Source: Adineta vaga (lineage: Eukaryota > Animalia > Rotifera). From it: a DNA stretch of 64,000 nucleotides. The translations under genes and the position numbers were made by a program. The stretch is from assembly GCA_021613535.1 (NCBI GenBank), contig CP075496.1, positions 12,834,001-12,898,000 on the forward strand, written 5' to 3'. Each line of letters begins with the position of its first letter. Position 1 is the first letter of the stretch. Of this stretch, positions 16,294-31,100 are shown piece after piece. Below the pieces are notes generated by a model. The model saw only the letters and a list, made by a program, of their open reading frames with translations. It searched no databases and was not told where the DNA came from.

Positions 16294-17820
16294 TCAAATC
16301 TTTTCATGTGTTAGATAATCTTGTAATAATTGACAAGCATCTGGATCATATTGGAAGCACTAAATTAAAAAGAAATGAAAATATTCAATGATAAATAATA
16401 GTTATTCTTACCTGTTTATACATTAGAACAGATTGTTTTGGATCTTTTTGGATTCCATAACCAAGTTCAAGACATCTACCAAGAATAAAAATTGCTATAG
16501 CAATACCTTTACGAATATATTGTGGTAAACAACATGATACTCTTGATAATTCATCGATATTATCTAGTGCAGCTACCCTAAATTCACGAGAAAATATATT
16601 CATATCAAAACATCTGTTCTTTGTCAAATTACCTTTTTGCTAAATCAGTTGCTTTAGTAAATAATTTTCTATTATAATAAGCATAAACAAGCAATCCCAT
16701 TGCCTAGAAATTGTCATTTTATTATCTTAGAATAATAATATTCATGAATGTTTAACTTACATAGATATTGCCTCGTTCAGATGCTTGTCGTAAATATTCA
16801 ATCGCTTGATTAATATTTTTAGGTATACCAACTCCAAATAAACTCATCGCGCCAACAGCACCTAAATTTCCACAATCGATACTTTTTTTATGACTATTAG
16901 AAGTATGTACATTATCTTACCAAGACTTTCAAGTGATCCACGTCGTGCTGCTTGATTATGCCAATACCATGCTTTACTTAAATTATAAACAAATGAACTT
17001 TTACGTGAATAGAAAAAAGCTAAAGCTGTTTGAGCTTCAACGACTGGATCATGTCCATCACCACTTGCAGCTAATAACCACCAACTAGAATGAAATATTT
17101 CTACTAAATACACGTTGAAAAATCATCATCACTATTACTGTTCAGCTTTATCTTCAGAATGTGCGACACCAAAACCTTGAAAAAAAGCTTTACCAATATG
17201 GAATTCTGCATAAGGAACAACAAAACAATTTGGATCTTTTCCTTTCGATGAAATTTCAATCATCATTTGATAAGCATCATCCTTAAAGAAAGTACAATCA
17301 AAAGTTTTCTATTACACATACATTTTTAACATACCGGTGTACATTCTTTCGAACCTACTCCATCAAAACCCATCGTAGCGAGTTGATAAAGTGCTAAAAG
17401 AAACTCACTTCAATTAAATGAACCTAATGAATATTCAAATAAAAATTTACCTCGTAGATCGATATCTTTAATTTTCGAATACCATCTCCATGCTTTCTCA
17501 TATTGTTCTGTATCATAATAAAATTGCGCAAGAAGAAAGATCCCTTCACGAGCTCGACATTTACATTTCGAAGGATCATATACATCCATTTGACATGCAC
17601 ATTCAGTTAATTCAAGTAAATCACTTTCATATTCGTCTTCTCGACCATTTTCACGTAATAATTCACGTGTATTATCTCTCTATGAGATCACTATTAATCA
17701 TTTATAATCTTTAATGTAAAAGAGACTTACTAGAATTAATCTTTCAATCATAAATTCTCGGGCACCGAGTGCTTGAGGAATGGGAGCTGCAAATTTTTCA
17801 CCAATACTCTGTGCCGTCAT
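16294..17820 (-). CDS. LRP2BP: LRP2-binding protein (SEL1-like repeats), multi-exon
   Basis: IFLLAQFYYD..; AWYWHNQAARRGSLESL|GAVGAMSLFGVGIPKNINQAIEYLRQASERGNIY; ELSRVSCCLPQYIRKGIAIAIFILGRCLELGYGI; C-terminus YLTHEKI*. Colinear with LRP2BP as recalled. Confidence 0.88.
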
Positions 17821-18604
17821 TGTTTCTAGAATCAAATCAAAGTAATAATTATAAGAGAAAAAAGAAAATTTCTATGTTACGAAAATAACAGTATCAAATT
17901 TCAAACTGCAAATAAAAGAAAACAAAATTGTTGATTGATGACGTAGCAGCAATTAAAGTACACGACTGAACTCAAGAGTTATATTCAACTTTGAAGTAAT
18001 TATAGGATAGGATAATCTTAGAGATTATCTAAGTTTAAAATATTTATTTCTTTTTCTGATCTATTGACAAATTCTGACAATGAGTTTACAAGAAAGAATG
18101 TCTGATTAAGTAAACAGAACGTATTTTTCTACACACGTTCAGCTGTTTTTGCGATGCCATTTACTAAGTATTTGCGATGGAAAAATCTCTTTCCAAAATC
18201 AATAATTTCAATTGAAATTTTCACAAATTCATCTCTGATATTATTTTTAATAGAAATCATTTGGTTTCATGATAAAATTCGAATTTATTTTTATATTAAT
18301 ATTTCTGTCAACTAGCACCATCTTGAATGTGTCATACCTTGAAAAGGTCATCCAATAAGGTTCAATAGTTTTTTCATATTTGTTTTCTCTTCTCACTCGT
18401 TCTCGTCAAAGAAACATAACATATAAATTTGAAAAGTATTTTTAAATTCCTTCTTTTTTTTGTCGTCTTCGAACATGACTTTATCTTATGACTCAATCAC
18501 TTTTTATTCATATCCATTGTGACTCATATTCAGATCGATCATATATATATATACTATATTACATTAATATACTTTTTATAGATTTTATTTTTATCATAGA
18601 AGTA

Positions 18605-19488
18605 ATGGCGGCATCAAATAAAACAGCAGCTGTCTATCGGCTAATTATGGTACGAAACTTTCCTAGAAAAATTATGAATATTTTTTGTTCATATAAATCA
18701 TTTAGGTTGGTAGTGGTGGTGTAGGAAAATCCGCTCTCACACTTCAATATATGTATGATGAAGTAAGTGTGAATCATTCATAGTAATTTTGCATACGTTA
18801 TGAAATTTAGTTTGTTGTGGATTATGAACCAACAAAAGCTGATTCCTATCGAAAAGCAGTTATGCTTGATGGTGAAGAAGTTCAAATTGATATTTTAGAT
18901 ACTGCTGGACAAGAAAATTATGCTGGTTGGTTGTTCAAAAGAATATTTCTTGTTTGTTATCTATTTTCTTTTAGCTATTCGAGATACATATATTCGTAGT
19001 GGTGAAGGTTTTCTTCTTGTATTTGATGTAACAGATGCTGAATCATTTACTGATCTCAATGAACTTTAGTAGGTTATTTTATTCATCGGGAAAGAAATAT
19101 ATTCAATTATTCGTCTTATTTAGTGAACAAATTTTACGTGTTAAAAATGGTGGAACAAATATTCCAGCAATATTAGTAGGAAATAAAATCGATTTAGCTG
19201 AACGACGTAAAGTTACGTTAGAAGATGCAGAACAAAAAGCACGTAGTTGGTCTATTCGTTATATTGAAACATCAGCGAAAACAAAACATAATGTTGATAA
19301 GGTAATATTTCGTAATTTTCTATTGTTCTAAACATTCATTTTGGATTTTTACAAAGGTTTTCTGTGAATTAATGCGAATTGTTCGACCATTTAAACATCC
19401 TGTTCGAGAAACGAATCCTACTGCACCAGCAGGTCGACCAAGCAAACCTCCCAAAGCCAAAAAAGAAAAAAAATGTGTTATTTTATAA
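18605..19488 (+). CDS. RALA: Ras-related GTPase Ral (6 exons)
   Basis: [18 protein letters not shown], Ral-specific effector loop [24 protein letters not shown] and CAAX box CVIL*. Confidence 0.95.
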
Positions 19489-20172
19489 ATCAATATTACG
19501 AGTTCTTCTTTCTCTTTCTTAATCATCAGATTTATCATCGTTTGTTATTTCTTTCTCTCTCTCATATTCAGTTCAAATTAACATCAAACAACAGTGAAGA
19601 AATATCCTAGAAAATAATAATAATCATTTCTTCTTCTTCTTTTTTTCTCTTGTGCAATTAATCGGTTTTCTTTTCTGTGCATGTGTAATTCACTCATGTT
19701 ATTGAGGATAAACACATTGATTCACATTAACACAATGGTTTATTTACTCTTTTCTTTCTTTTCTTTTGTACACAAGCACTTGTTTGTTCTGCTTCAAAAT
19801 TAATAAATCAATTTCTTACAATTTAAACGATAAACGATAGAATTTTTTCAAATGAAACTTATGATTTCATTCTTTTTGATATTCAAGGTTGTAACATAAT
19901 ACGTCGATGTTATTAAACTTTTATTGATTCAAAGTTTTATGTTGATTTGACGTGTTTTGTCAATATAAAATTCCATTTCATCTTTTTCATATTTAATTAA
20001 TTGATTTATGGAAAGCATGAAATTCTCGAGAGAAGAATTCTCAAGTGAATAAGATGAAATCTTATCGATTTGCATGAGAAATTAGTTCTTTTGTTATGTA
20101 ATAAAACTAGATTGGAAAATATTTTATTCATAAAATTATCGATTGATGTTTTTACTTTCAAATTCAAATGAA

Positions 20173-22536
20173 TTATTGTTGAATAATGTCATACATACGT
20201 TGTTCATGAGGAGGAAAACGCCATTGAAAATTTCTTTCCTTTCCTTCAATAACAAATGTTTCAATTTGTATATGATCTTGATTACAAGAAAGACGAATAG
20301 TTTCTAAATCAAATTTTCCTTCTAATTCATCATAACAATCCATTGATTCACCATCATCATCATAGAAATTCAATTCACTAATACCAGTTTTTTCAAATGG
20401 ATAAATACGAACTTCGAAATGATCATCCATTTCAAATGGTAATATAGCACCTTCGCGAACGAATAGAGGAAATATATCTAAAGCTGCTGAAACTGTGATA
20501 CTTTGTCCACCATCATAGATTTCATCGGTCCAAAAATTATACCATTTTGTTCCGAATGGTAAATATAATGTTCGACTAGTAGCATTTTCTTCATAAACAG
20601 ATGCAATAAGTAACCATGGACCAAGAAGGAATTCGAACGATTGTTCACGACATTTTTTATCCGATTGAAAATGATAAACAGTTGGACGAATAATTGGATG
20701 ACCACTAATCATCGCTTCATGTGAAAGAGAATAGAGATATGATTGTAAACGTTTTCGAAAAAGTAATGCATCATGAATTAATGGTAATGCATCTTCATAC
20801 ATCCATAAAGAATTTTCATTATTATCATCAGAATTATCATCTTGATTTGGACGCCAAGAATGAACACAAAATCTTGGATGAAAAATACCATTCTGTATCC
20901 AACGAACAAATAATTCTAATGAAGGTTTTTCACCAGCAAATCCACCGATATCATGTCCAATTAATGGATAACCACTTAAAGATAAATTCAAACCCATTGG
21001 TATATTGTATTTCAAGGTATGCCATGAACAACGATTATCTCCTGTCCATGTTCCACCATATCGTTGCGTACCTGCACATGCTGCACGTGTTAATAACCAT
21101 GGACGAGTTTTTGAATTTGCTTCAATTTGTGCATCATAGGATGTTTTAACCATTAACATTGTTTGTATAGGTCTTAAACCTTCAATCGATTGTCCATGAA
21201 AACATTTTGCATGAGAATTTCGTATATTAAATTCATTATTATCATTCCATGTACAATCAATTCCATTGTGTAAGATTTTTTCTATAACTTGTTTCTTCCA
21301 CCAGTTGACTGTATTTGGATTTGTGAAGTCTAAATGTGCACCTAATCCACCCCAGAACGGTGCTAAATCCGGTTGAGTTTGTTTTTCATTTTGTATAAAT
21401 AATGATTGACATTCATTAAAATATGGATGTGTAGTTAACATAGCTGGTTTGATATTTCCTAAAATTTTCATTCCAGCACGATGGAAATTTTCTGTCATAG
21501 TTAATGGTGATGGTACACGTTTCTTATCCCAAACAAATACATATCGTTTTCCATCATTACTATTCATAGAATAACCAGATGATAGGTGAAAACCTGTACA
21601 TTCAATATGATATTTTGAACATTTATCAATAAATGTCTTCAACATATCTTCCGCATTGATTGCATCCGTATATTTCATTGCTGAACCTAAATAACCCAAT
21701 GTCCATTTTGGTGCTAATGGACAGTGGCCTGTTAACTTTACATATTGTTCAACTACATGTTCAATTAAAGGTCCATTGATAAAATAATAATCTAAATCAG
21801 GATCTTTACTTTCAAAATAAACGATATTGCCAAAATAATTATCAATTTCACAACCAAAATCAAATGTACAATCATATGTTGTATCATAAAACAATCCAAA
21901 AGCATGTTCATGTCGTAATGTAATATAAAATGGAATATGTTTATAAAGTGGATCACTATGTTCAGCATTGTAACCCATGGCATCCATATTTCTCATACGA
22001 TATCGACGAAATTTCTTATCAATTAGACCACTTTTTTCACCTAAACCATAATAATAATAATCGTCATCAGTCGATGGTCGAGAAAGTGTATGACGAAATT
22101 GTTGTGTAGATAAATGATATTGATAACTACAAACAGGATTATCTTGTAGAAGAATTTCATTATTTATTATCCATGTTATCGCAAATGGTTTACGTAAATG
22201 AACTTTACATGTTATGTTATCTGTTGACATGATCACTTCATTATCAACTTCAATGACAGTGAAGAGACAAGTATCGTTTGTATAATTATTTCGTGGAATT
22301 TCATGACGAAGTCTACCCTCATATGGAACATCATTCGTTTCTTTATCGACAATAGCCCATGTACGTGTGGTAGTGGGTTCACCTTTTGGCCAAACTCGAA
22401 CACGAACAAGATTGTGAGTTAAAATAGTAATGACATAGTTTGTTAATAGATTTTCTTGAGAAAAAATAATAGTATGATTTGTCTCATCGTGTAACCATTT
22501 TAATGATACATTTTCAATCGAATCTTCAAAGAACAT
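20173..22536 (-). CDS. Glycoside hydrolase family 31 alpha-glycosidase, Aec37-like subfamily; intronless, HGT candidate
   Basis: 787 aa single ORF; YYGLGEK, DPLYKHIPF, GFHLSSGYS..KRYVFVWD, nucleophile motif WNDNNE, acid/base motif WTGDN, GHDIGGF, ELFVRW, HPRFCVHSW. Confidence 0.93.
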   Translation of the reverse strand: MFFEDSIENVSLKWLHDETNHTIIFSQENLLTNYVITILTHNLVRVRVWPKGEPTTTRTWAIVDKETNDVPYEGRLRHEIPRNNYTNDTCLFTVIEVDNEVIMSTDNITCKVHLRKPFAITWIINNEILLQDNPVCSYQYHLSTQQFRHTLSRPSTDDDYYYYGLGEKSGLIDKKFRRYRMRNMDAMGYNAEHSDPLYKHIPFYITLRHEHAFGLFYDTTYDCTFDFGCEIDNYFGNIVYFESKDPDLDYYFINGPLIEHVVEQYVKLTGHCPLAPKWTLGYLGSAMKYTDAINAEDMLKTFIDKCSKYHIECTGFHLSSGYSMNSNDGKRYVFVWDKKRVPSPLTMTENFHRAGMKILGNIKPAMLTTHPYFNECQSLFIQNEKQTQPDLAPFWGGLGAHLDFTNPNTVNWWKKQVIEKILHNGIDCTWNDNNEFNIRNSHAKCFHGQSIEGLRPIQTMLMVKTSYDAQIEANSKTRPWLLTRAACAGTQRYGGTWTGDNRCSWHTLKYNIPMGLNLSLSGYPLIGHDIGGFAGEKPSLELFVRWIQNGIFHPRFCVHSWRPNQDDNSDDNNENSLWMYEDALPLIHDALLFRKRLQSYLYSLSHEAMISGHPIIRPTVYHFQSDKKCREQSFEFLLGPWLLIASVYEENATSRTLYLPFGTKWYNFWTDEIYDGGQSITVSAALDIFPLFVREGAILPFEMDDHFEVRIYPFEKTGISELNFYDDDGESMDCYDELEGKFDLETIRLSCNQDHIQIETFVIEGKERNFQWRFPPHEQRMYDIIQQ

Positions 22537-22613
22537 AATCTAGAAAAGCAAAAAAAATCGCAATCATTGATAGAAAAAATCGAAAAAAAAAGAAAAGAAC
22601 GGAAAGATATAGT

Positions 22614-24293
22614 CTAATCGTTTGGATATCGTGTTCCATTGATTGTCCATGCAGTTGGTGTGAATAGTTTGACAAGTGTTTGTACATTTTTTAAATATTT
22701 TTCTTCAAGCATATCAGCAACATGGACTAGATTATTGTCTACTGCATAAGCAGCAACTAAACCTGCTGCTTGTCCTATAGAGAATTCGACAGGATGTAAA
22801 CGAACTGCAGAATTGACTAAAAATGATTGTGCCATGGTTTTACCGATTACTATCAGGTTATCTATGTCACGATTTGTCATAGCACGTAATGGTATATAGT
22901 AAGGTAGAATAGAATAAGGCGTTTTCATATACGATGGATAATTACATTGTGGCATTCTATGAATATCAACATTATACGCACCGATACATACACGATCATC
23001 AAATATATAACCATGCAAATCACGGGCATGTCCACTAATAGTTGTAATATTCATTAGAAAATTTCCAACACCAATGGATCGACGAGATTCTCGTAAGTAA
23101 GGCATTTTTGCGAGACCATGACATGTACCTGCTGCTGGAACCGAACGTACGAGTACGGTTCGATTGGTCCACTGTGTTGGTGCCTGTTGTCTATACCAAT
23201 AATGATATCCATAAGCTTGTCGTTCCGCATTTTGAATTGCATCTAAATTGACACCACCTTGCCATTGATTTGTATCTCGTTGATGTTGAGCATCCGATGG
23301 AGAGAGGAAAAAAAATTCTTTGTGATAATCATTTCCTCCTGACCAGTTTTGTATTGTCAAATCATTGACAGCAACAATATCTGAATTCGGTGCAGATGTA
23401 TTTACTCTTCGATATGTCCATATACGCTCCCATGTTAAAGACTCAAACGTATAATTTGCTCCTCCAGTTGGTTCAGGTAATGGATTGGGAGGTTCATCAA
23501 CAGGTGTCTCTCGTAGTTGTTGAAGAAAATCGAATGTAAATGATTGACCACAGGTCGAATCACCCATACCTGATGTATCACCATCGAAACGTTCCATTAA
23601 ACCTTGTAAATAACTTGCATTTGATAATACTAATACTTCACCCCATGAACTACCTTCCATTACGAATGATAGATTTGTAAATGTTAATTGAGTTTTTGTA
23701 AACCATGCACTATCTGTTGATGAATACCAATCTGGTAATTCTTCGGATAAGAATCGACAACGTTCCGACGATGATTGAATAGGTGTCCGTTGAATAGCAT
23801 CGATTTGAATAATTCGACGACCACTTTCATCTTTATTAATACGTTTAATAACAGTATTATAGAATATACGAATTTCATCTAATTCTGGTAATACGGCTTC
23901 TGAATGAAACAAATTTGGAACTGAACATTTTGGTGATACCCAACATCGACCAGTATCACCTAAGACCGTAAGCATTTTAGCAAACATTGGATTTTGATTA
24001 TTCAATTGTCGATCAATTGCACCAACATTCAAAGTAAAATTTGAATCTTTATCTTTTACTGTATGGTATGCAAAATCTGGTGCACTTAATAATTCAGCTG
24101 TTAATTGGCCACCAGCCCAATCGGTAGGTTCAAGTAAACATACACGTGTATGCAAAAATTTTGAAGCTGTTAAAACTGCTCCTAAAGCTGATGTTGTACC
24201 ACCAACAATCAACAATTCACAATTATCAATCGTACGAATAGATGAATTGATTGAATGAATAAGAAAGAAAAATATTAGAGTATAAAATAGCAT
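22614..24293 (-). CDS. Secreted FAD-dependent oxidoreductase (FAD_oxidored/PF12831-like); intronless, HGT candidate
   Basis: 559 aa single ORF; signal peptide; Rossmann-like LLIVGGTTSALGA..CLLEPTDWAGGQLT; PYLRESRR; PYYIPLRAM; NLIVIGK; AVRLHPVEFSIGQAAG. These motifs are typical of the bacterial family. Confidence 0.85.
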   Translation of the reverse strand: MLFYTLIFFFLIHSINSSIRTIDNCELLIVGGTTSALGAVLTASKFLHTRVCLLEPTDWAGGQLTAELLSAPDFAYHTVKDKDSNFTLNVGAIDRQLNNQNPMFAKMLTVLGDTGRCWVSPKCSVPNLFHSEAVLPELDEIRIFYNTVIKRINKDESGRRIIQIDAIQRTPIQSSSERCRFLSEELPDWYSSTDSAWFTKTQLTFTNLSFVMEGSSWGEVLVLSNASYLQGLMERFDGDTSGMGDSTCGQSFTFDFLQQLRETPVDEPPNPLPEPTGGANYTFESLTWERIWTYRRVNTSAPNSDIVAVNDLTIQNWSGGNDYHKEFFFLSPSDAQHQRDTNQWQGGVNLDAIQNAERQAYGYHYWYRQQAPTQWTNRTVLVRSVPAAGTCHGLAKMPYLRESRRSIGVGNFLMNITTISGHARDLHGYIFDDRVCIGAYNVDIHRMPQCNYPSYMKTPYSILPYYIPLRAMTNRDIDNLIVIGKTMAQSFLVNSAVRLHPVEFSIGQAAGLVAAYAVDNNLVHVADMLEEKYLKNVQTLVKLFTPTAWTINGTRYPND

Positions 24294-26410
24294 TTCTCGT
24301 TTTGAATATATCTAAGATAGGAAAAACACTGTATTTTTGCAATCAGAAATGATCTATTATTTTAAATAATATTATCAGTTGTAAAATTAATATAAAAATT
24401 CTCGAGATAATCGTTGTTAATTCGTATTCATTTGGCTTTCAACAATTTATAACATTCATTAATATTTATTGATCTATCGATAAGATTTTATTACCAATAA
24501 AAACATAGAAACGTGTTTGATTGCAAAAAAATCAATATTAGTGCATAAATGGTACGAATCCCTATCATGATATTTCTTCTCTCAACTCAACCTTCTTTTT
24601 ATTCTTAGATAAATAAATCTACTTAACATAGAAACTGTATATAAACGAGTTCTTTACAAATATAATAATGTCATTCATTAACGAATCGTTTCCTGCTATT
24701 ATTTTTTACTACAAAATACATCTTAATCTAGTATATACAATAGAAAGAACCTGTTGGCTTTATCACACTCTCTATTATACTGTTTTCTCCGTCATTATCA
24801 AATCTGGTAAGCAATATATGATTTTCATGTATATTTTATATATCATTCTGTCATGTAAATATATAAACACTTATATAAACATGTGAAATATCTTGAGTCT
24901 ATATAATATCAAGGCAAAGAAAACAAATATTTTTACAACATACGATTTACTAAATAAATTTGTTGATCTAAATGAGATTTTCGAAATCGAACGGATATAA
25001 ATCAAAGTTAGTTTTCCTGTAGAAAGAAAAAATTATTGTTTATCTAGATACATACTTAACAAGAAAATGAAGTCGTTAAACGCGGAGAAAAGGTAAGCAA
25101 TATACTTGTGAATAGTAAAATGTATTAAATAAAAATTGCGTATTTATCGAAGAAAATAAAATGAGATAAAAAATATTTATAAAATGAAAATAAATAGAAA
25201 AAAGACACATCTTTTGTTGCATTATAATAATTATCTCTCCTTATCATTGTGTTGCATTTCGTTTTTTTTTCTCTGGATAAAATAAGATAAAAAGCAGAAT
25301 TGAATGTAATTACTCTTGTGTTTGCCTATTTCGTTCATTGTCTTTATCTATTATAAGAATTCAAAATAGATTTTAAAACGATGTGAATAACTGTTTATTT
25401 AGATAAAACAATCTCTTGTGTGTTTATCGATAATCATCATGTATCAAAACTTGCAATGGAGCAGACAAATACGAATTTTGATGAGAGAGTTATCAAGATT
25501 TAAAGATATTTTAATTTTATTCATTTACTCTTCTTTGAGAAAACGTTTGACACTTTAAGACTGTAATGCAATTATCAATAAATCCATCTTACAATCAACA
25601 ATCCTTTCTCTCATCGCACATATATTTCATCTGTAACCACAAAACATTCTCCAAGTTGACCCAAATTACTCTTGAGATGGTTTTTCTCTTGTAATCAGTA
25701 GAAAGACACTCGCTAATGTTGATATGTCTCTGCATAAGTAGCGAAAGTCGTGTACGTGTCTCGAGCTCTATTCGATAGGTTTTTTCTCTTGTTTTGGTTC
25801 TAACTACATAGACTGAAAACAAAAATAACTTTTGTGTATGCTACAAAATCTATCCATCTCACATGAAAGACGTCAATAAGGATTTGTAAATAATTATTTC
25901 CAATATTCCAACAATACTTAGTAAACATAAATAAATCATCATGTTATTTTGTTAGGTTTTCTTCGTGTAATAACTGGTTCTTAATACGTAACATTCTATT
26001 AGAGTCTAGTTGGTAAATTGGAAAAGAATAGTTTGCTTTACTTGGAAAAAAAACAGTCTGGATTTTTCAACATGAATACAAAGCCTATAGAATCATTTCT
26101 ATATCTATGTTGTAGTGAAATCTTTTACATAAAGAATGAAGTTGATGACGAAATTCTTCTTTTTTTTTCCTTCTGTTTATTTTGTTTTCTATCTTAATTT
26201 AATCGACTGACAACTTGTATTGCATAATATATAGAAATAAAAACAACAAAACAGATGTAAACTTTTGTTTCTATTCTAGATCTTATGCCTTTCAGTAGTG
26301 AATCATTTATTATTGTCTCCTTCTCATGTCATGTTATTTTAGATTTTCTCTTCAATCTATGATTATTACATTTCTTCAATTGATGAGTACACGTCAAATA
26401 TAATATAATC

Positions 26411-27842
26411 ATGTCTTATTATCAAGTTTCTCGTAAGTTCTGTTTGTTTGTTTTTTCTTAAATAAAAAAAAAGTTACAATTAGATAATATTTAGTTCTCC
26501 TTTCATTAGTATTGATAATCATTCATATGAATTGTTTGACATATGCCAAAGAACAAGATTCCACTACTATTCATCTTGAAGCACCTCATTTAACTGATCG
26601 AATACATAGTGATCGACCACCAATACAACTTTCGGTGGATAAAGCACGAAAGAAATCGAAAACAATAGTCTCTGCAACTAAGAATCTATTCAATCCATGT
26701 AACGGGTCATATGTAAAAACAAATGGAACAACTTGTGGTCTTAAACAAATCATGCTCGGTCGTTGCTATGAATATCAGTATATTAAATATCAATTATTTC
26801 TCACAAATCGATCGTAAGATATTGTTTTCATATTTTCTATTTTATTAAAATTCAAAGAATTTCTTTCTCAAAAGGAATGTTAAAAATTGTTCACAACTTT
26901 ATCAAACATTTGAATCTGCAGTACGACATAAACAACATTGTAATATGAATATGAGTACATATCAAGCATATTTCGACTTAGCATTAGCCGATGTTCATGT
27001 GATCAATCGAGTAAATCAATTCAAAAGAAAATCTTTGAAGAGGTTTTTCTTATTCTTTGATTAGGCAATGTTTTGGAGTGGTACATATGGTGTTACACAT
27101 GCGTATGGTGGAAATGGAGCAAATTATATAACCTTAGAGGATACACTTGCTGCAGCTATGGTCAATGGTCTCGTTTGGTGTGGAAATGAAAATGCGACCG
27201 AAGGATTTGATTTTATTAGTTGTCCAAATAGTTGTAAAGATAATCGATGGGCTGATTTAGCATTTTGGGGCTTAGCATCGAAGACAGTGAGATCAAAAAG
27301 GAATGAAATAGATGAATTGAAATCATTTACTTTAGTTTGCTCAATTAGCTGCTGGTGAAATTTATGTTGTTCTTAATGGAAGTCAAATAAATCGATCAGC
27401 ATTTCGTAATAATTCATATTTTTCCGATTTTGAACTACCGAATTTTCGACGAATTGGTGAATATCGTGTTACGAAAATAAATATTCTTCTTCTCCATTCA
27501 CCCGATGCAAAAGTTGTGTAAGTCAAATGATTTCTTCACCAACACTTGTTCTCTTCTTCTTTTCATAGTGAGAAATGTGGCGAGAAAAGTCTGATTCAAT
27601 TAGAAGAATTAGTTTTAAATAAAGGTTTTCAATATGCATGTAAAGATGATCCCGAAGAATTAATTTTAATTATGTGCGGAAATCAATGGGAAGCACGAGA
27701 ATGTCAAATAGCCCGACGAGTATTACGACAAGCATGGGACACGAAACTTTATGGAACATCAATTAGCAAACAAAATTCCTATTCGTTTTCTCTCTTTTTA
27801 TTAACGTTTTTATTCGAAATCTTATCTTCAATAAAATTTTAA
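26411..27842 (+). CDS. ADP-ribosyl cyclase / NAD+ glycohydrolase (CD38/CD157 family), probably GPI-anchored (6 exons)
   Basis: MSYYQVS|LLSLVLIII signal peptide; IMLGRCYEY; FWSG; signature TLEDTL; GLVWCG; FWGLAS; VLNGS; catalytic-Glu motif FSDFELPN; hydrophobic C-terminal tail. Confidence 0.92.
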
Positions 27843-28178
27843 TAGATCAATATTTTTCAATACAGATCTCTTCTGTCATTTATTTCAATTAAATCTTCTT
27901 TTTCTCTTTTTCTTTTTGACGTATGTGTAACAATGAATAATTATGATCAATCTATTCGTATTATTAAAGAAGACATAATGAATTGATCGAATGATAATTA
28001 TTCATCGATAAAACGAATTGACGTTTTATTCAAAGTAAAAGTCTACGATATTATAGATACAATGTTTCGAAGAAAAAAGAGAAGAAAACAAAGCACACAA
28101 AAAAGACGAATTTTTTGTCTGTGTATACATCCAGCACCATTGATTTCACAAACGAAAGAGATACATATTTGACTTATG

Positions 28179-31100
28179 TTAAACAACCGTTGTTGGACTA
28201 TCGTGAGCAAGGACGAGCTAAAACAAAAAAAGAAAACAAAATATGTTTAATTTCTATTCTTAATGAAAGTGAAAAATATTGAATTCCGTTTCCAATAGCC
28301 CAGTAATAAAGAGCGGTTATTCTCATGCTCACAAAAACATAATAAAACATCAATCACTCATGCAAATCGGATATAGTCATTTAAGACAATTATAAAAGAG
28401 CAGCAAAACCCACTTCATCCTCAACAGTATCAGCCAATGGTGTTTCTTTCCGTGGAAAACGCTAAATTATATAATGGAAGAAAATATTCAATGAGCGAAA
28501 ACAAAAAGACAGAAAAGAAGTATTGAAGGATGACAATTTCTACCTTTAAGCTTGGTGATATTCCATTTGGAATGCCATTTTCATTCATTGGACAAACTAA
28601 ATCATCAGCTTCGACCGAACGTGTTCGTCGATGAGCGAATAAACCACGTGAAAATTTGATTTTTGTATGTGCAGTTAATGGTTGATAATTCGGCGATTTT
28701 TCATATTGATTTTTACGATCTTGTAAATCATTACCAATTAATTCTTGAAAACGCATTGTTAAATGTCGTCGTAATAGGGTTTTCGACATTGGTATTGATA
28801 GAATTTCCGCTAATGTTGAAGCATTGAAACGTAATTCAAGAATCTTTAAGAAATAGATATGATTTTTTTAAAAAGAAACAAAAAAAACGGTGGCTTTTAT
28901 TTCTTACAATCAAAGCACCACAAACACCTGATCCACGTAGATTTGGTGCATATTCCGATAAATCAATCGATCGTAACCATTCCATAACACGATGGTTTGA
29001 CCAATGCATGATTTCTGTCATATCATTTTTATCATCTGAACCTGGTCGACGTTTAATACATGATGGATTAAAACCATTTAAACGTAACACTTGAATAGCA
29101 CGTTTTATACTCAAATGATGAAGTTCATTTGTTATATTTAAATAAATAATATCTTCCTAAACAAAAATAAGATGAATAACATACTATTCAAAATGTTTGA
29201 TTTCTGTTTTCATACAAGAGTTAGATTATTGAGAAGACGACCATCAATTTTCGATTCAACAAAATATTCTTTATATTGAGGTAGACCAATATCATCAAGC
29301 CATTCTTAAGAATAATTTGTAGAAAAATGTTAACAATGATTATTAGAAGAAAAAAACAATTTTTGAATTATACTTTGAACCCAATGTGTATCGAGAATGT
29401 TTGCTTCAGTTTGTCGTGTACATAGACCATTTAAACATAATTGAAGTTTTTTTCGATGCAATGGATTCCGCATGCCAATTTTCTAAAGATCAAAATGTTT
29501 CTCTCTTTTCAAGTTTGTCTTCTTCTTACTTTTTCTAATTCTTGTGGTGAAGCATGTAAAAGTTGTAAACCATTTTTGAAATGTTTTCGACATTCACTGG
29601 CATATTGGCCAAGACCAATACCATATAACCAATTTACAATTTGTTCAGTTTGCCAACGAGAAAATGTCGTTTCCAAAGCACTGAAAAAGACAAGAATACC
29701 ATGACAAAATTTCATTTACAATCAAATATTAATCACAATATAAAGAGGCAGTCTTTTGTATCAACATTTCCCCAAGATAAGTTCATGGACATGAACATTA
29801 TTAAGATTTTTTCGGAACATCTGGAAACTGCCTTTAGGCCAGAAGACACAGATGAAATTTTTCTCATCAATTTCATAACAGTTTATCGATTAACAATAGG
29901 ATAGATAAGAGATGATAAAAATCGAACAGTTTTCTTACCTAAGTGGTTTAATTGATGTTTTACCACCACTAGTTGTTGCTCTTAAACCACCACGATTAAA
30001 TGGACTTGCAGTTTGATGTTCACTATCTTCACGAAAATTTCCTGAATTTGTTCGAATAATTCTAAAACATGAAGAATAAGTTTCACATTGAATTTTTTTT
30101 CTTATCATACCTTCCAAAAATACTTCTTAATCCTTTCGCACTTGATGATTTACTCTTATCTAAATTTGTTGATGATGATTTTTTATAAATTGAATATTTA
30201 TGACTTGGTCCATCGGATATATAACCACTTTGATCATCTAAAATTTGTAGAATCAATAATTTTCTTCTGATTTTCATCACTTTCATTCTTACATGTACGA
30301 TTCATTCTATCATCAGACGGAAGTGTTCGAATAATTGTCGATTGTTGTTGTTGTAGTTGTTTATCACGAATAGGTGTCTAGATAATAACATAGCATAGTT
30401 TATTTTTCCAAAGAATTATTTATAAAATATTGACATACATTGGTTAATTCTCTGGTCATCATTGGTTCAGCACTTGAAGCCTAAGAGATAAGACAAAAGA
30501 ACACTTTTTCTAGACAAAATACATATGAGCTATTTACTTACACGTTGTAGGACGTCAAGTTTCAATTTTGCTAATGGATTTTGATAGGCATTTAAACACG
30601 AATCATGACCATTATGGGATGATCGAGTTAATAGACAAGATGATGATGAAGGAGGCTTTTGAGATGGCTATTAAAAGTATATGATTATGTAATTATATTC
30701 AAAGATCTATATTATTACCGGTAAATCTTTATCACTATTCACGGATGGCAATGAATTTGAATCAGAATTATCACCGTCTGCTTCGTAACCAGGTTTTTGA
30801 ATAAGATGATGATTATTGGTATTAGTATTAACTAAATAAATCGATTATAGCTCAAGTTCATTTCTTTTTTTTTGTGACATTTACCAGAATTTTCAATTTT
30901 TTTTGTATTTATTGAGGATAATACTGATGATGAAATTTCGTTTGTGGGTGTACTAGTCGATAATCCAATAGATTGATATTTCGATATTTGACTTTGTAAA
31001 TCTTCAATCTTTTTTTCCTAAAAATAGATATGGATAAGTAGACAAGAAGAAGAGAGATAGAGTGTAATTATAGTATCGTAATTACTTTTTCGTCGTTGGA

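What the first reader, a model, noticed from the sequence alone, without database searches (positions are those of the whole stretch)
20173..24293. Two bacterial-type intronless enzyme genes arranged like a eukaryotic operon (secreted FAD oxidoreductase, then GH31)
Seen: both genes are intronless (559 and 787 aa) among intron-rich neighbours, on the same strand and only 77 nt apart. The spacer is almost all pyrimidine tract, ends in TTTTCTAG|ATT-ATG, and has no convincing donor or room for a promoter plus 3'UTR. Known: both carry motifs of mainly bacterial families (PF12831-like; Aec37-like GH31), and bdelloids have extensive HGT and SL trans-splicing. Inference: a horizontally acquired glycoside-processing pair that was either kept or newly assembled as a bicistron resolved by trans-splicing. 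One enzyme is secreted and the other lacks a signal peptide.
Basis: partly seen in the sequence, partly recalled or inferred. Interest (0 to 1): 0.8.

Follow-up and report, generated by a model that had tools for sequence, protein, structure and literature searches.

The report
Two foreign enzyme genes, operon-like pair
In a bdelloid rotifer genome (it fits Adineta vaga), two enzyme genes that came separately from non-animal donors lie head to tail 77 bases apart, and the second starts right behind a splice acceptor kept in all ten rotifer lineages examined, so they probably form one transcription unit cut up by spliced-leader trans-splicing, though no leader-joined RNA was seen.

Summary
Two intronless minus-strand ORFs, a PF12831 flavoprotein with a signal peptide (24293-22614) and a GH31 alpha-glycosidase (22536-20173), are separated by a 77-nt pyrimidine-rich spacer that ends ...TTTTCTAG|ATT-ATG.

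Both genes are foreign. GH31 nests with full support among Anaerolineae (Chloroflexota) sequences. The flavoprotein's nearest relatives are environmental sequences and anaerobic protists, then Planctomycetota and Myxococcota. None of 80 bacterial flavoprotein loci has a GH31 within 10 kb, so the pair was not inherited as a bacterial operon.

The pair and its flanking genes are kept in seven bdelloid lineages, with spacers of 48-99 nt in six and 753 nt in one. A pyrimidine tract plus AG sits 1-3 nt before the GH31 ATG in 10 of 10 lineages, while the rest of the spacer cannot be aligned. The genome holds 59 spliced-leader exon copies.

RNA assemblies show two colinear, separately ended mRNAs. 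One contig bridges the spacer, and another ends exactly at the acceptor AG. No leader-joined read was seen, so co-transcription is probable (about 0.55), not shown.

A functional link between the two enzymes is unsupported, because one is exported and the other cytosolic. This scan has already flagged three other operon candidates in this genome.

The parts
24570..24822 (.). Low-depth RNA contigs 280-530 nt upstream of the flavoprotein ATG. They may be the outron of the primary transcript. A TATATAAAA lies at 24842-24834 on the minus strand.
   Evidence: X1 record 6 (depth 2.7) and X13 record 11 (depth 2). Sequence. The strand of the RNA is unknown, so this assignment is an inference.
24312..24329 (-). 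Pyrimidine tract plus AG (tttttcctatcttAG|a), 18 nt before the flavoprotein ATG. Candidate SL acceptor of the first gene.
   Evidence: for the sequence. A comparable Yn-YAG lies 6-18 nt before the ATG in the six lineages compared and in L106. The X13 RNA contig ends at 24311, the first base after this AG.
22614..24293 (-). Intronless gene for a 559-aa PF12831 FAD-dependent oxidoreductase with a signal-peptide-like N-terminus (residues 1-18) and 10 N-X-S/T sequons.
   Evidence: AlphaFold model with pLDDT 92.7. RNA contigs X1 22644-24297 and X13 21359-24311 are colinear with the genome. It is single copy in the genome.
22537..22613 (-). 77-nt intercistronic spacer. It is U-rich, has no AATAAA and no donor-like GT, and cannot be aligned between lineages except for its last ~20 nt.
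22540..22557 (-). Pyrimidine tract plus AG (ttttttttgcttttctAG), 3 nt before the GH31 ATG. Candidate SL trans-splice acceptor.
   Evidence: TCTAG|A is conserved in 9-10 of 10 bdelloid loci, including loci where the flavoprotein gene is absent. The X1 GH31 contig ends at 22541, the last base that a leader ending ...AAGAG would share with the genome.
20173..22536 (-). Intronless gene for a 787-aa GH31 alpha-glycosidase without a signal peptide. The catalytic residues Asp432 (WNDNNE) and Asp500 (WTGDN) are present.
   Evidence: RNA contigs are colinear with the genome. This clade is single copy in the genome.
20108..20172 (-). GH31 3' UTR, with AATAAA at 20128-20123 and the RNA contig ending about 15 nt further on.
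   Evidence: for the sequence. The X5 contig ends at 20108 and the X1 contig at 20148.

Best explanation
Two genes of independent foreign origin were acquired before the split of the sampled bdelloids. One is a cytosolic GH31 alpha-glycosidase from a Chloroflexota-like donor. The other is an exported PF12831 flavoprotein from a clade shared with protists and Planctomycetota/Myxococcota.

In the ancestor of the non-Didymodactylos bdelloids the two genes came to lie head to tail, between a divergent multi-exon gene that contains an ADP-ribosyl-cyclase-like exon and a convergent Ras-like GTPase gene.

Proposed mechanism (inferred): transcription starts in the 2.2-kb region upstream of the flavoprotein gene and runs through both ORFs. 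The 22-nt spliced leader is joined at the acceptor 18 nt before the first ATG, and again at the acceptor 3 nt before the GH31 ATG. The upstream mRNA is cleaved and polyadenylated within the 77-nt U-rich spacer. The result is two monocistronic mRNAs.

Shown here: the gene content, the foreign origin, the conserved adjacency and acceptor, the presence of the SL genes, expression of both genes as separate colinear mRNAs, and RNA that crosses the spacer in one data set.

Inferred: the single promoter and the actual joining of the leader.
For: Foreign origin:
- For GH31, the hits after the bdelloids are all bacterial at 43-50% identity, and the named ones are all Chloroflexota.
- In the GH31 tree the bdelloid clade (100) lies inside a 100-supported clade with two Anaerolineae sequences. 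The genome's own animal-type GH31 paralogs are 28-36% identical and far away.
- Flavoprotein: no other animal appears among the 120 best hits, and the genome has no paralog. The bdelloids form one clade (99) whose sisters are environmental sequences and then protists, separate from the named bacteria.

Integration in the host genome:
- GC is 30-37% like the surroundings, on a 15-Mb chromosome-scale contig.
- Flanking synteny is kept across lineages.
- One RNA run (X5) shows a poly(A) tail plus adapter on the neighbouring gene, so it is true RNA.

Operon reading:
- The same order and strand occur in seven lineages, with spacers of 48, 56, 69, 77, 81, 99 and 753 nt.
- A pyrimidine tract plus AG lies 1-3 nt before the GH31 ATG in 10 of 10 lineages, while positions further upstream are at background conservation.
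- The genome has 59 copies of the leader exon ...ACTTACCAAGAG followed by GTAAAT, against 0 in the control.
- The X13 RNA contig 21359-24311 crosses the spacer although the flanking intergenic DNA has no coverage.
- The X1 GH31 contig ends at exactly 22541.
- The 3'-biased run X5 covers the 3' parts of both genes but not the GH31 5' half, so the mature mRNAs are separate.
- In L103 and L104 the flavoprotein gene is missing from the same syntenic slot, yet GH31 is intact with its acceptor. It lies 2.2-2.4 kb from the upstream neighbour, the distance at which the flavoprotein gene lies elsewhere. This argues against a GH31 promoter inside the flavoprotein ORF.
Against: - No read or contig carrying leader letters was seen on either gene, and a pattern scan for the SL-GH31 junction in metagenome contigs found nothing.
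- All RNA evidence comes from assembled contigs, which cannot show strand, true ends or single molecules. A bridging contig could arise from overlapping UTRs.
- In X1 and X5 nothing was laid on 22542-22643, and the upstream contig stops at 22644 for an unknown reason. The coincidence at 22541 could therefore be the edge of an unresolved allelic bubble.
- The contig ends at the first gene (24311 and 24297) are 1-2 nt off what the leader-sharing logic predicts.
- One lineage has a 753-nt spacer containing AATAAA, which leaves room for its own promoter.
- Operons have not been reported in rotifers (PMC7986045).
Confidence: 0.55

Rival explanations
1. The two genes are independent, tightly packed transcription units. 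GH31 has its own promoter in the spacer or in the 3' part of the flavoprotein ORF. The conserved acceptor only serves ordinary SL trans-splicing, which trims a short outron.
For: The genome is compact, and SL trans-splicing of single genes is known in bdelloids. Lineage L004 has a 753-nt spacer with AATAAA. GH31 is kept without the upstream gene in L103 and L104. X1 and X5 show no contig across the spacer.
Against: Six lineages have only 48-99 nt between stop and ATG, about 20 nt of which is the acceptor tract, and nothing else in the spacer is conserved. A promoter inside the flavoprotein ORF would have been lost in L103 and L104, where GH31 is still intact. The X13 RNA contig runs across the spacer.
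Confidence: 0.3
2. The acceptor before GH31 is used in cis. Either a donor in an upstream non-coding exon or a donor inside the flavoprotein ORF is spliced to 22539.
For: A polypyrimidine tract plus AG cannot by itself tell cis- from trans-splicing. The RNA contigs break at both 22644 and 22541.
Against: No joint was reported in four runs. There is no GT donor at or near 22644. Joining 22644 to 22541 would be non-canonical and out of frame with the GH31 ATG. The letters at the two breaks do not fit a shared junction. The short spacers leave no room for an extra exon.
Confidence: 0.07
3. A stable bicistronic mRNA is translated twice, by reinitiation or internal entry, without being processed.
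For: The X13 contig spans both ORFs.
Against: In the 3'-biased run X5, coverage sits at the 3' parts of both genes (22644-23414 and 20108-20911) with none on the GH31 5' half. In X1 the two genes are on separate contigs with different depths, 54 and 25.
Confidence: 0.04
4. The stretch is bacterial contamination or an assembly artefact.
For: Both protein families are mainly bacterial.
Against: GC is 30-37% like the rest of the window. The stretch is embedded in a 15-Mb contig between multi-exon animal genes, with synteny kept in 10 loci from independent assemblies. There is polyadenylated-RNA evidence, splice-acceptor motifs, and introns gained in Didymodactylos.
Confidence: 0.01

Closest known systems
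Spliced-leader-resolved operons of nematodes, tunicates (Ciona, Oikopleura) and chaetognaths
   Same: Same-strand genes with unrelated functions are separated by a spacer of tens of bases. A 3' splice acceptor lies directly before the downstream ORF. The spacer is U-rich without a clear poly(A) signal. The mature mRNAs are monocistronic, and the genome has an SL RNA gene family.
   Different: Neither the polycistronic precursor nor the leader junction has been shown here. I found no sign of an operon-specific second leader like the nematode SL2, although only variants within 2 mismatches of one leader were searched. Operons are not reported for rotifers in the papers I could search (PMC7986045; PMC12460157, lists rotifers only among trans-splicing lineages). 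Both cistrons are foreign genes.
Horizontally acquired, domesticated genes of bdelloid rotifers (Gladyshev et al. 2008, cited in PMC6053224; Boschetti et al. 2012, PMC3499245)
   Same: These are intronless ORFs of bacterial-type carbohydrate and redox enzyme families. Their base composition matches the host, they are expressed, and they are conserved across bdelloid genera.
   Different: The published cases are described gene by gene. Here two acquisitions with different nearest relatives are joined into one tightly spaced unit that is conserved between families.
Transfer of a whole bacterial operon into a eukaryote (yeast siderophore cluster, bioRxiv 10.1101/399394, title and abstract seen)
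   Same: Adjacent foreign genes sit on one strand in a eukaryote.
   Different: In that case the gene order was inherited from the bacterial donor. Here the two families are never neighbours in 80 bacterial loci and have different nearest relatives, so the arrangement arose in the host.
GH31 alpha-glucosidases: Sulfolobus MalA (PDB 2g3m) and uncharacterised Anaerolineae GH31 proteins
   Same: Three-domain architecture (N-terminal beta-sandwich, TIM barrel, C-terminal domain), with both catalytic aspartates aligned to MalA.
   Different: The match to any characterised enzyme is only about 1e-70, far below the NCBIfam equivalog cutoffs (318 against 800 bits). The substrate (alpha-glucoside, alpha-xyloside or other) is open.
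PF12831 exported flavoproteins of Planctomycetota and Myxococcota
   Same: 40-42% identity over the full length. The GG-T-x-A dinucleotide-binding motif and about 60 other columns are invariant. The N-terminus carries an export signal: Tat-like RRxFL in bacteria and a hydrophobic signal peptide in bdelloids.
   Different: No member of this family has been characterised or solved. Only the FAD-binding domain matches known folds. The bacterial neighbours are GHL10, a sodium:solute symporter, Gfo/Idh/MocA enzymes, a XylR-type regulator and AnmK, never GH31.

Membership tests
Glycoside hydrolase family 31 | PF13802 N-domain + PF01055 TIM barrel + PF21365 C-domain above the Pfam thresholds | tested here: met
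   115.9, 257.6 and 89.0 bits against cutoffs of 27, 23.5 and 24.4.
Glycoside hydrolase family 31 | Catalytic nucleophile Asp in the W-x-D-x-N-E motif and acid/base Asp in the W-T-G-D-N motif | tested here: met
   WNDNNE (Asp432) aligns with WLDMNE of MalA, and WTGDN (Asp500) is identical to MalA.
Glycoside hydrolase family 31 | Substrate specificity (alpha-glucosidase, alpha-xylosidase or other) | not testable with these tools
   NCBIfam equivalog scores are far below the cutoffs. The nearest relatives are uncharacterised MAG proteins.
PF12831 FAD-dependent oxidoreductase | Pfam model above threshold, with an N-terminal dinucleotide-binding beta-alpha-beta unit followed by an acidic residue | tested here: met
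   130.8 bits against 27. G31, G32 and E55-P56 are invariant; the FAD domain aligns with fumarate reductase and GR2-type flavoproteins (Z about 14).
PF12831 FAD-dependent oxidoreductase | FAD binding and redox activity on a defined substrate | not testable with these tools
   No sequence relative has a solved structure, and the substrate domain has no structural match.
SL trans-splicing-resolved operon | Same-strand genes with a short intercistronic region | tested here: met
   77 nt here, and 48-99 nt in five further lineages.
SL trans-splicing-resolved operon | One promoter and a polycistronic primary transcript | tested here: inconclusive
   The X13 RNA contig crosses the spacer, but X1 and X5 have a hole there. 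Contigs cannot prove single molecules.
SL trans-splicing-resolved operon | Spliced leader joined to the 5' end of the downstream mRNA | tested here: inconclusive
   The acceptor is conserved in 10 of 10 lineages. There are 59 leader exon copies in the genome. The X1 contig ends at the AG. However, no leader letters were seen.
SL trans-splicing-resolved operon | Mature mRNAs are monocistronic | tested here: met
   Separate contigs with different depths in X1. In the 3'-biased run X5, coverage sits at the 3' ends of both genes. This rests on contig-level evidence only.
Horizontally transferred gene | Nested with support among non-animal sequences and far from the host's own paralogs | tested here: met
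   GH31: (100 support inside the Chloroflexota clade). Flavoprotein: (all relatives are non-animal, but the donor is unresolved between a protist-like and a bacterial source).
Horizontally transferred gene | Physically integrated in the host genome and expressed | tested here: met
Bacterial operon inherited whole | The two families are neighbours in donor-type genomes | tested here: not met
   0 of 80 bacterial flavoprotein loci has a GH31 within +-10 kb. The neighbours of bacterial GH31 loci were not examined.

The most novel reading that the evidence does not exclude
This would be a true rotifer operon, a layout not yet published for the phylum, built in the host from two foreign genes of different origin. 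Spliced-leader trans-splicing would let a newly arrived or relocated promoterless ORF be expressed behind another gene, giving a concrete route by which bdelloids domesticate foreign DNA. The loci where one partner was later lost while the acceptor stayed (L103, L104, L105) would then record how such units are built and taken apart.
Probability: 0.45. Interest if true: 0.65.

Novelty: new member of a known kind. Interest (0 to 1): 0.5.

Why it matters
Bdelloid rotifers are the animal group with the most foreign genes, and how those genes become expressed is an open question. A conserved unit in which two unrelated acquisitions share one transcription start and are separated by trans-splicing would tie the phylum's two known oddities, massive gene transfer and spliced leaders, into one mechanism. 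It would also add rotifers to the animal groups with operons. The locus is easy to test: an SL-primed PCR and one RT-PCR across 77 bases would settle it. Taken one at a time the genes are ordinary, one more GH31 and one more uncharacterised flavoprotein among many bdelloid acquisitions.

Tried and rejected
1. Inherited bacterial operon: rejected. No GH31 lies within 10 kb of the gene in 80 bacterial flavoprotein loci, and the two genes have different nearest relatives.

2. Cis-splicing between the two RNA contig breaks (22644 to 22541): rejected. There are no GT..AG sites, no joint was reported, the junction would be out of frame, and the letters at the breaks do not fit.

3. Poly(A) site at 22644: rejected. 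The next genomic bases would shift the break to 22643, and the site lies inside the ORF.

4. Direct search for the leader on these genes led nowhere. No loose leader letters appeared in four runs. An SL-junction pattern found 0 matches in metagenome contigs. No homologous protein begins with a translated leader.

5. A second metagenome scan for more bdelloid loci found nothing, because the peptide patterns were too specific.

6. Function of the flavoprotein from structure: the AlphaFold model is good (pLDDT 92.7), but Foldseek and VIA-align match only the generic FAD domain. A sequence search and a profile search of the PDB gave the same result.

7. The original rotifer SL paper (Mol Biol Evol 2005) is not held in the library. 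I recalled the leader sequence from memory and then verified it against the genome.

8. Contamination: rejected (see the rival explanations).


Full report
WHAT IS THERE

The window is part of a 100.8-Mb, six-contig genome at about 30% GC. The best protein matches are to Adineta ricciae at 84-85% identity. This fits the chromosome-level Adineta vaga assembly.

Two uninterrupted ORFs lie on the minus strand:
- 24293..22614, 559 aa.
- 22536..20173, 787 aa.

The 77 nt between them are U-rich on the coding strand and end ttttctAG|att-ATG. They contain no AATAAA, and the only AG is the terminal one.

Pfam gives PF12831 (FAD_oxidored) for the first ORF and the full three-domain GH31 architecture for the second. 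RNA contigs are colinear with both ORFs and show no joints, so both genes are truly intronless. The flanking genes appear as strings of short exons. The only addition is that both genes read on the minus strand.

THE PROTEINS

GH31:
- The nucleophile Asp432 (WNDNNE) and the acid/base Asp500 (WTGDN) both align to Sulfolobus MalA.
- No characterised enzyme is close. The best PDB match is 1e-70, and NCBIfam equivalog scores are far below their cutoffs. It is an active-looking alpha-glycosidase of unknown substrate.
- It has no N-terminal hydrophobic segment.

Flavoprotein:
- The N-terminus is signal-peptide-like, and there are ten N-X-S/T sequons.
- Planctomycete relatives start with Tat-like RRxFL signals, so the family is exported in both kingdoms.
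- The AlphaFold model is confident (pLDDT 92.7), but only the FAD-binding domain matches solved structures. Foldseek gives TM of 0.31 or less. VIA-align gives Z of about 14 over 170-300 of 559 residues. Sequence and profile searches of the PDB find nothing beyond the Rossmann-type N-terminus.
- In 80 bacterial loci the recurrent neighbours point to sugar or amino-sugar metabolism:
  - GHL10 putative glycosidase, 32 loci.
  - Sodium:solute symporter, 16 loci.
  - Gfo/Idh/MocA oxidoreductases, 15 + 15 loci.
  - XylR/AraC-type regulator, 12 loci.
  - AnmK-type anhydro-sugar kinase, 12 loci.
- None of the 80 loci has a GH31 within 10 kb.

A shared substrate for the two rotifer enzymes is therefore unsupported, and their predicted compartments differ.

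ORIGIN

GH31:
- After 16 bdelloid hits (57-85% identity) every further hit is bacterial at 43-50%, and the named ones are all Chloroflexota.
- In the tree the bdelloid clade (support 100) sits inside a 100-supported clade with two Anaerolineae sequences. The genome's own animal-type GH31 paralogs (28-36% identity) are very distant.

Flavoprotein:
- There is no paralog in the genome and no other animal among the 120 best hits.
- The bdelloids form one clade (99) whose sisters are two environmental sequences (100). Pelomyxa and Paratrimastix follow with weak support. The named Planctomycetota and Myxococcota form a separate clade.
- Foreign origin is solid, but a bacterial donor is not established.

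Both genes are present in Didymodactylos, the deepest bdelloid branch sampled. There each has gained an intron, and they lie on separate short contigs.

THE ARRANGEMENT THROUGH TIME

The order flavoprotein then GH31 on one strand recurs in seven lineages:

| Locus | Lineage | Spacer (nt) |
|---|---|---|
| window | this genome | 77 |
| L005 | A. ricciae | 81 |
| L106 | JGI contig | 56 |
| L006 | Rotaria socialis | 99 |
| L002 | Logan contig | 69 |
| L001 | Logan contig, 53% GC | 48 |
| L004 | ENA contig | 753 |

The pair is bracketed by two conserved blocks:
- Upstream block U (window 26467-29600) contains an ADP-ribosyl-cyclase-like exon. It appears to read divergently: the Pfam-bearing ORFs in L104 and L105 lie on the opposite strand.
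- Downstream block D (window 16400-19514) is a Ras-like GTPase gene. Its poly(A) site at 19834 shows that it converges on GH31.

Three further contigs keep U and D but hold only one partner:
- L103 and L104 have GH31 alone, 2.2-2.4 kb from U. That is the distance at which the flavoprotein gene lies in the window (2.17 kb).
- L105 has the flavoprotein gene followed by a GDSL lipase gene, and no GH31.

A second flavoprotein paralog in Rotaria lies elsewhere.

The simplest reading is an ancestral U-flavoprotein-GH31-D unit in non-Didymodactylos bdelloids, with later loss of one or the other partner in duplicated or diverged copies. This is an inference. Whether L103-L105 are ohnologs or separate species could not be settled.

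EVIDENCE FOR TRANS-SPLICING AND CO-TRANSCRIPTION

1. Conserved acceptor. With the ATG as anchor, TCTAG|A, or TTCAG|A in L002 and CAG|C in Didymodactylos, is conserved in 9-10 of 10 loci. A pyrimidine tract precedes it. Positions beyond -20 are at background, and the spacers cannot be aligned. Only 0.86% of ATGs in the window carry such a motif. The acceptor is kept even where the upstream gene is gone.

2. First-gene acceptor. The flavoprotein gene has a comparable Yn-YAG 6-18 nt before its ATG in the paired lineages compared.

3. Leader genes. The genome holds 59 copies of the leader exon...ACTTACCAAGAG followed by GTAAAT, against 0 matches for the control pattern. The window has none.

4. 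RNA assemblies.
   - X5 is true poly(A) RNA, because it shows a poly(A) tail plus adapter at 19834.
   - X1, X5 and X13 cover the genes but not the flanking intergenic DNA.
   - X13 has one contig, 21359-24311, that crosses the spacer.
   - The X1 GH31 contig ends at 22541, exactly the last base that a leader ending ...AAGAG shares with the genomic ...TCTAG.
   - The X13 contig ends at 24311, the first base after the upstream acceptor.
   - In the 3'-biased X5, coverage sits on the 3' parts of both genes, so the two mature mRNAs have separate 3' ends.
   - GH31 has a normal AATAAA (20128-20123), and its contig ends about 15 nt further on.

5. Promoter location. Loss of the flavoprotein ORF in L103 and L104 did not destroy GH31. 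This argues against a GH31 promoter inside that ORF.

WHAT IS MISSING

- No leader letters were seen on either gene, in a junction-pattern scan, or as translated N-termini.
- Contigs cannot prove single molecules, strand or true ends.
- In X1 and X5 nothing was laid on 22542-22643, and both upstream contigs stop at 22644 for a reason I could not establish (see the notebook entry under 'unexplained'). This weakens the 22541 coincidence.
- One lineage has a 753-nt spacer with AATAAA.

I therefore put the operon reading at about 0.55. The rival of two tightly packed independent units, each trans-spliced, is at about 0.3. Cis-splicing and a stable bicistronic mRNA are both low.

COMPARISON WITH WHAT IS KNOWN

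The layout works like SL-type operons of nematodes, tunicates and chaetognaths. Of that class's defining features:
- Met: short same-strand spacing and monocistronic products.
- Inconclusive: the polycistronic precursor and the leader junction.

The papers I could search state that SL trans-splicing occurs in rotifers but that operons have not been reported there (PMC7986045). Searches for Adineta or bdelloid together with operon or polycistronic terms found nothing further.

Foreign gene expression in bdelloids is well documented (PMC3499245). The idea that trans-splicing may ease functional gene transfer has been raised for Paulinella, with rotifers named as a parallel (PMC6053224).

This scan has already noted three other operon candidates in the same genome. 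All rest on conserved acceptors, and none has the leader seen. Those are unchecked notes and were not used as evidence.

VERDICT

- Foreign origin is confirmed for both genes, with different sources.
- Assembly of the pair in the host is supported.
- Trans-splicing-resolved co-transcription is probable but unproven.
- A functional pairing of the two enzymes is unsupported.

I class it as a new member of a known kind (an SL-type operon candidate made of domesticated foreign genes), with interest 0.5.

Noticed in passing
G000 C5:9.88-9.93 Mb and 10.91-10.93 Mb, C2:8.68-8.69 Mb and others; example L018:1340-1530: The 59 spliced-leader exon copies mostly sit as head-to-head pairs about 154 nt apart, in clusters. 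Each exon reads ...GCTTATTACAACTTACCAAGAG followed by GTAAATACC. Several copies carry single-base variants (A for C at position 10 or 13).
   Followed up: partly
window 22542-22644: Two independent RNA assemblies (X1, X5) both end the flavoprotein contig at exactly 22644, 30 nt before the last base of the stop codon, and lay nothing on the next 102 nt. X13 runs through with only a G>A at 22620. No explanation was found. It might be filtered low-complexity bubble arms.
   Followed up: partly
window 24570-24842: Low-depth RNA contigs (24570-24822 in X1, 24649-24799 in X13) lie just downstream of a TATATAAAA at 24842-24834 (minus strand). They may be the outron and start of the primary transcript. 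The strand is not known.
   Followed up: no
window 19773-19834: A poly(A) tail plus Illumina adapter follows 19834 in run X5. This marks the 3' end of the plus-strand Ras-like GTPase gene (exons at about 16400-19514), which converges on GH31 with about 270-310 nt between the two 3' ends.
   Followed up: no
L105:6681-7891: In a GC-rich (47%) bdelloid contig, a GDSL-lipase ORF 152 nt downstream on the same strand takes the place behind the flavoprotein gene. Blocks U and D are kept and GH31 is absent. In contigs L103 and L104, GH31 is present and the flavoprotein gene is absent.
   Followed up: partly
L009:5040-6789 and L007:391-2754: The Didymodactylos copies of both foreign genes have each gained a short intron. 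The GH31 there still has ttttttgtttcAG directly before its ATG.
   Followed up: partly
L001 (whole locus): One bdelloid-type contig carrying the pair has 53% GC, against 30-37% in Adineta and Rotaria, which shows a wide range of base composition among the lineages that hold this unit.
   Followed up: no
I did not examine it.
   Followed up: no
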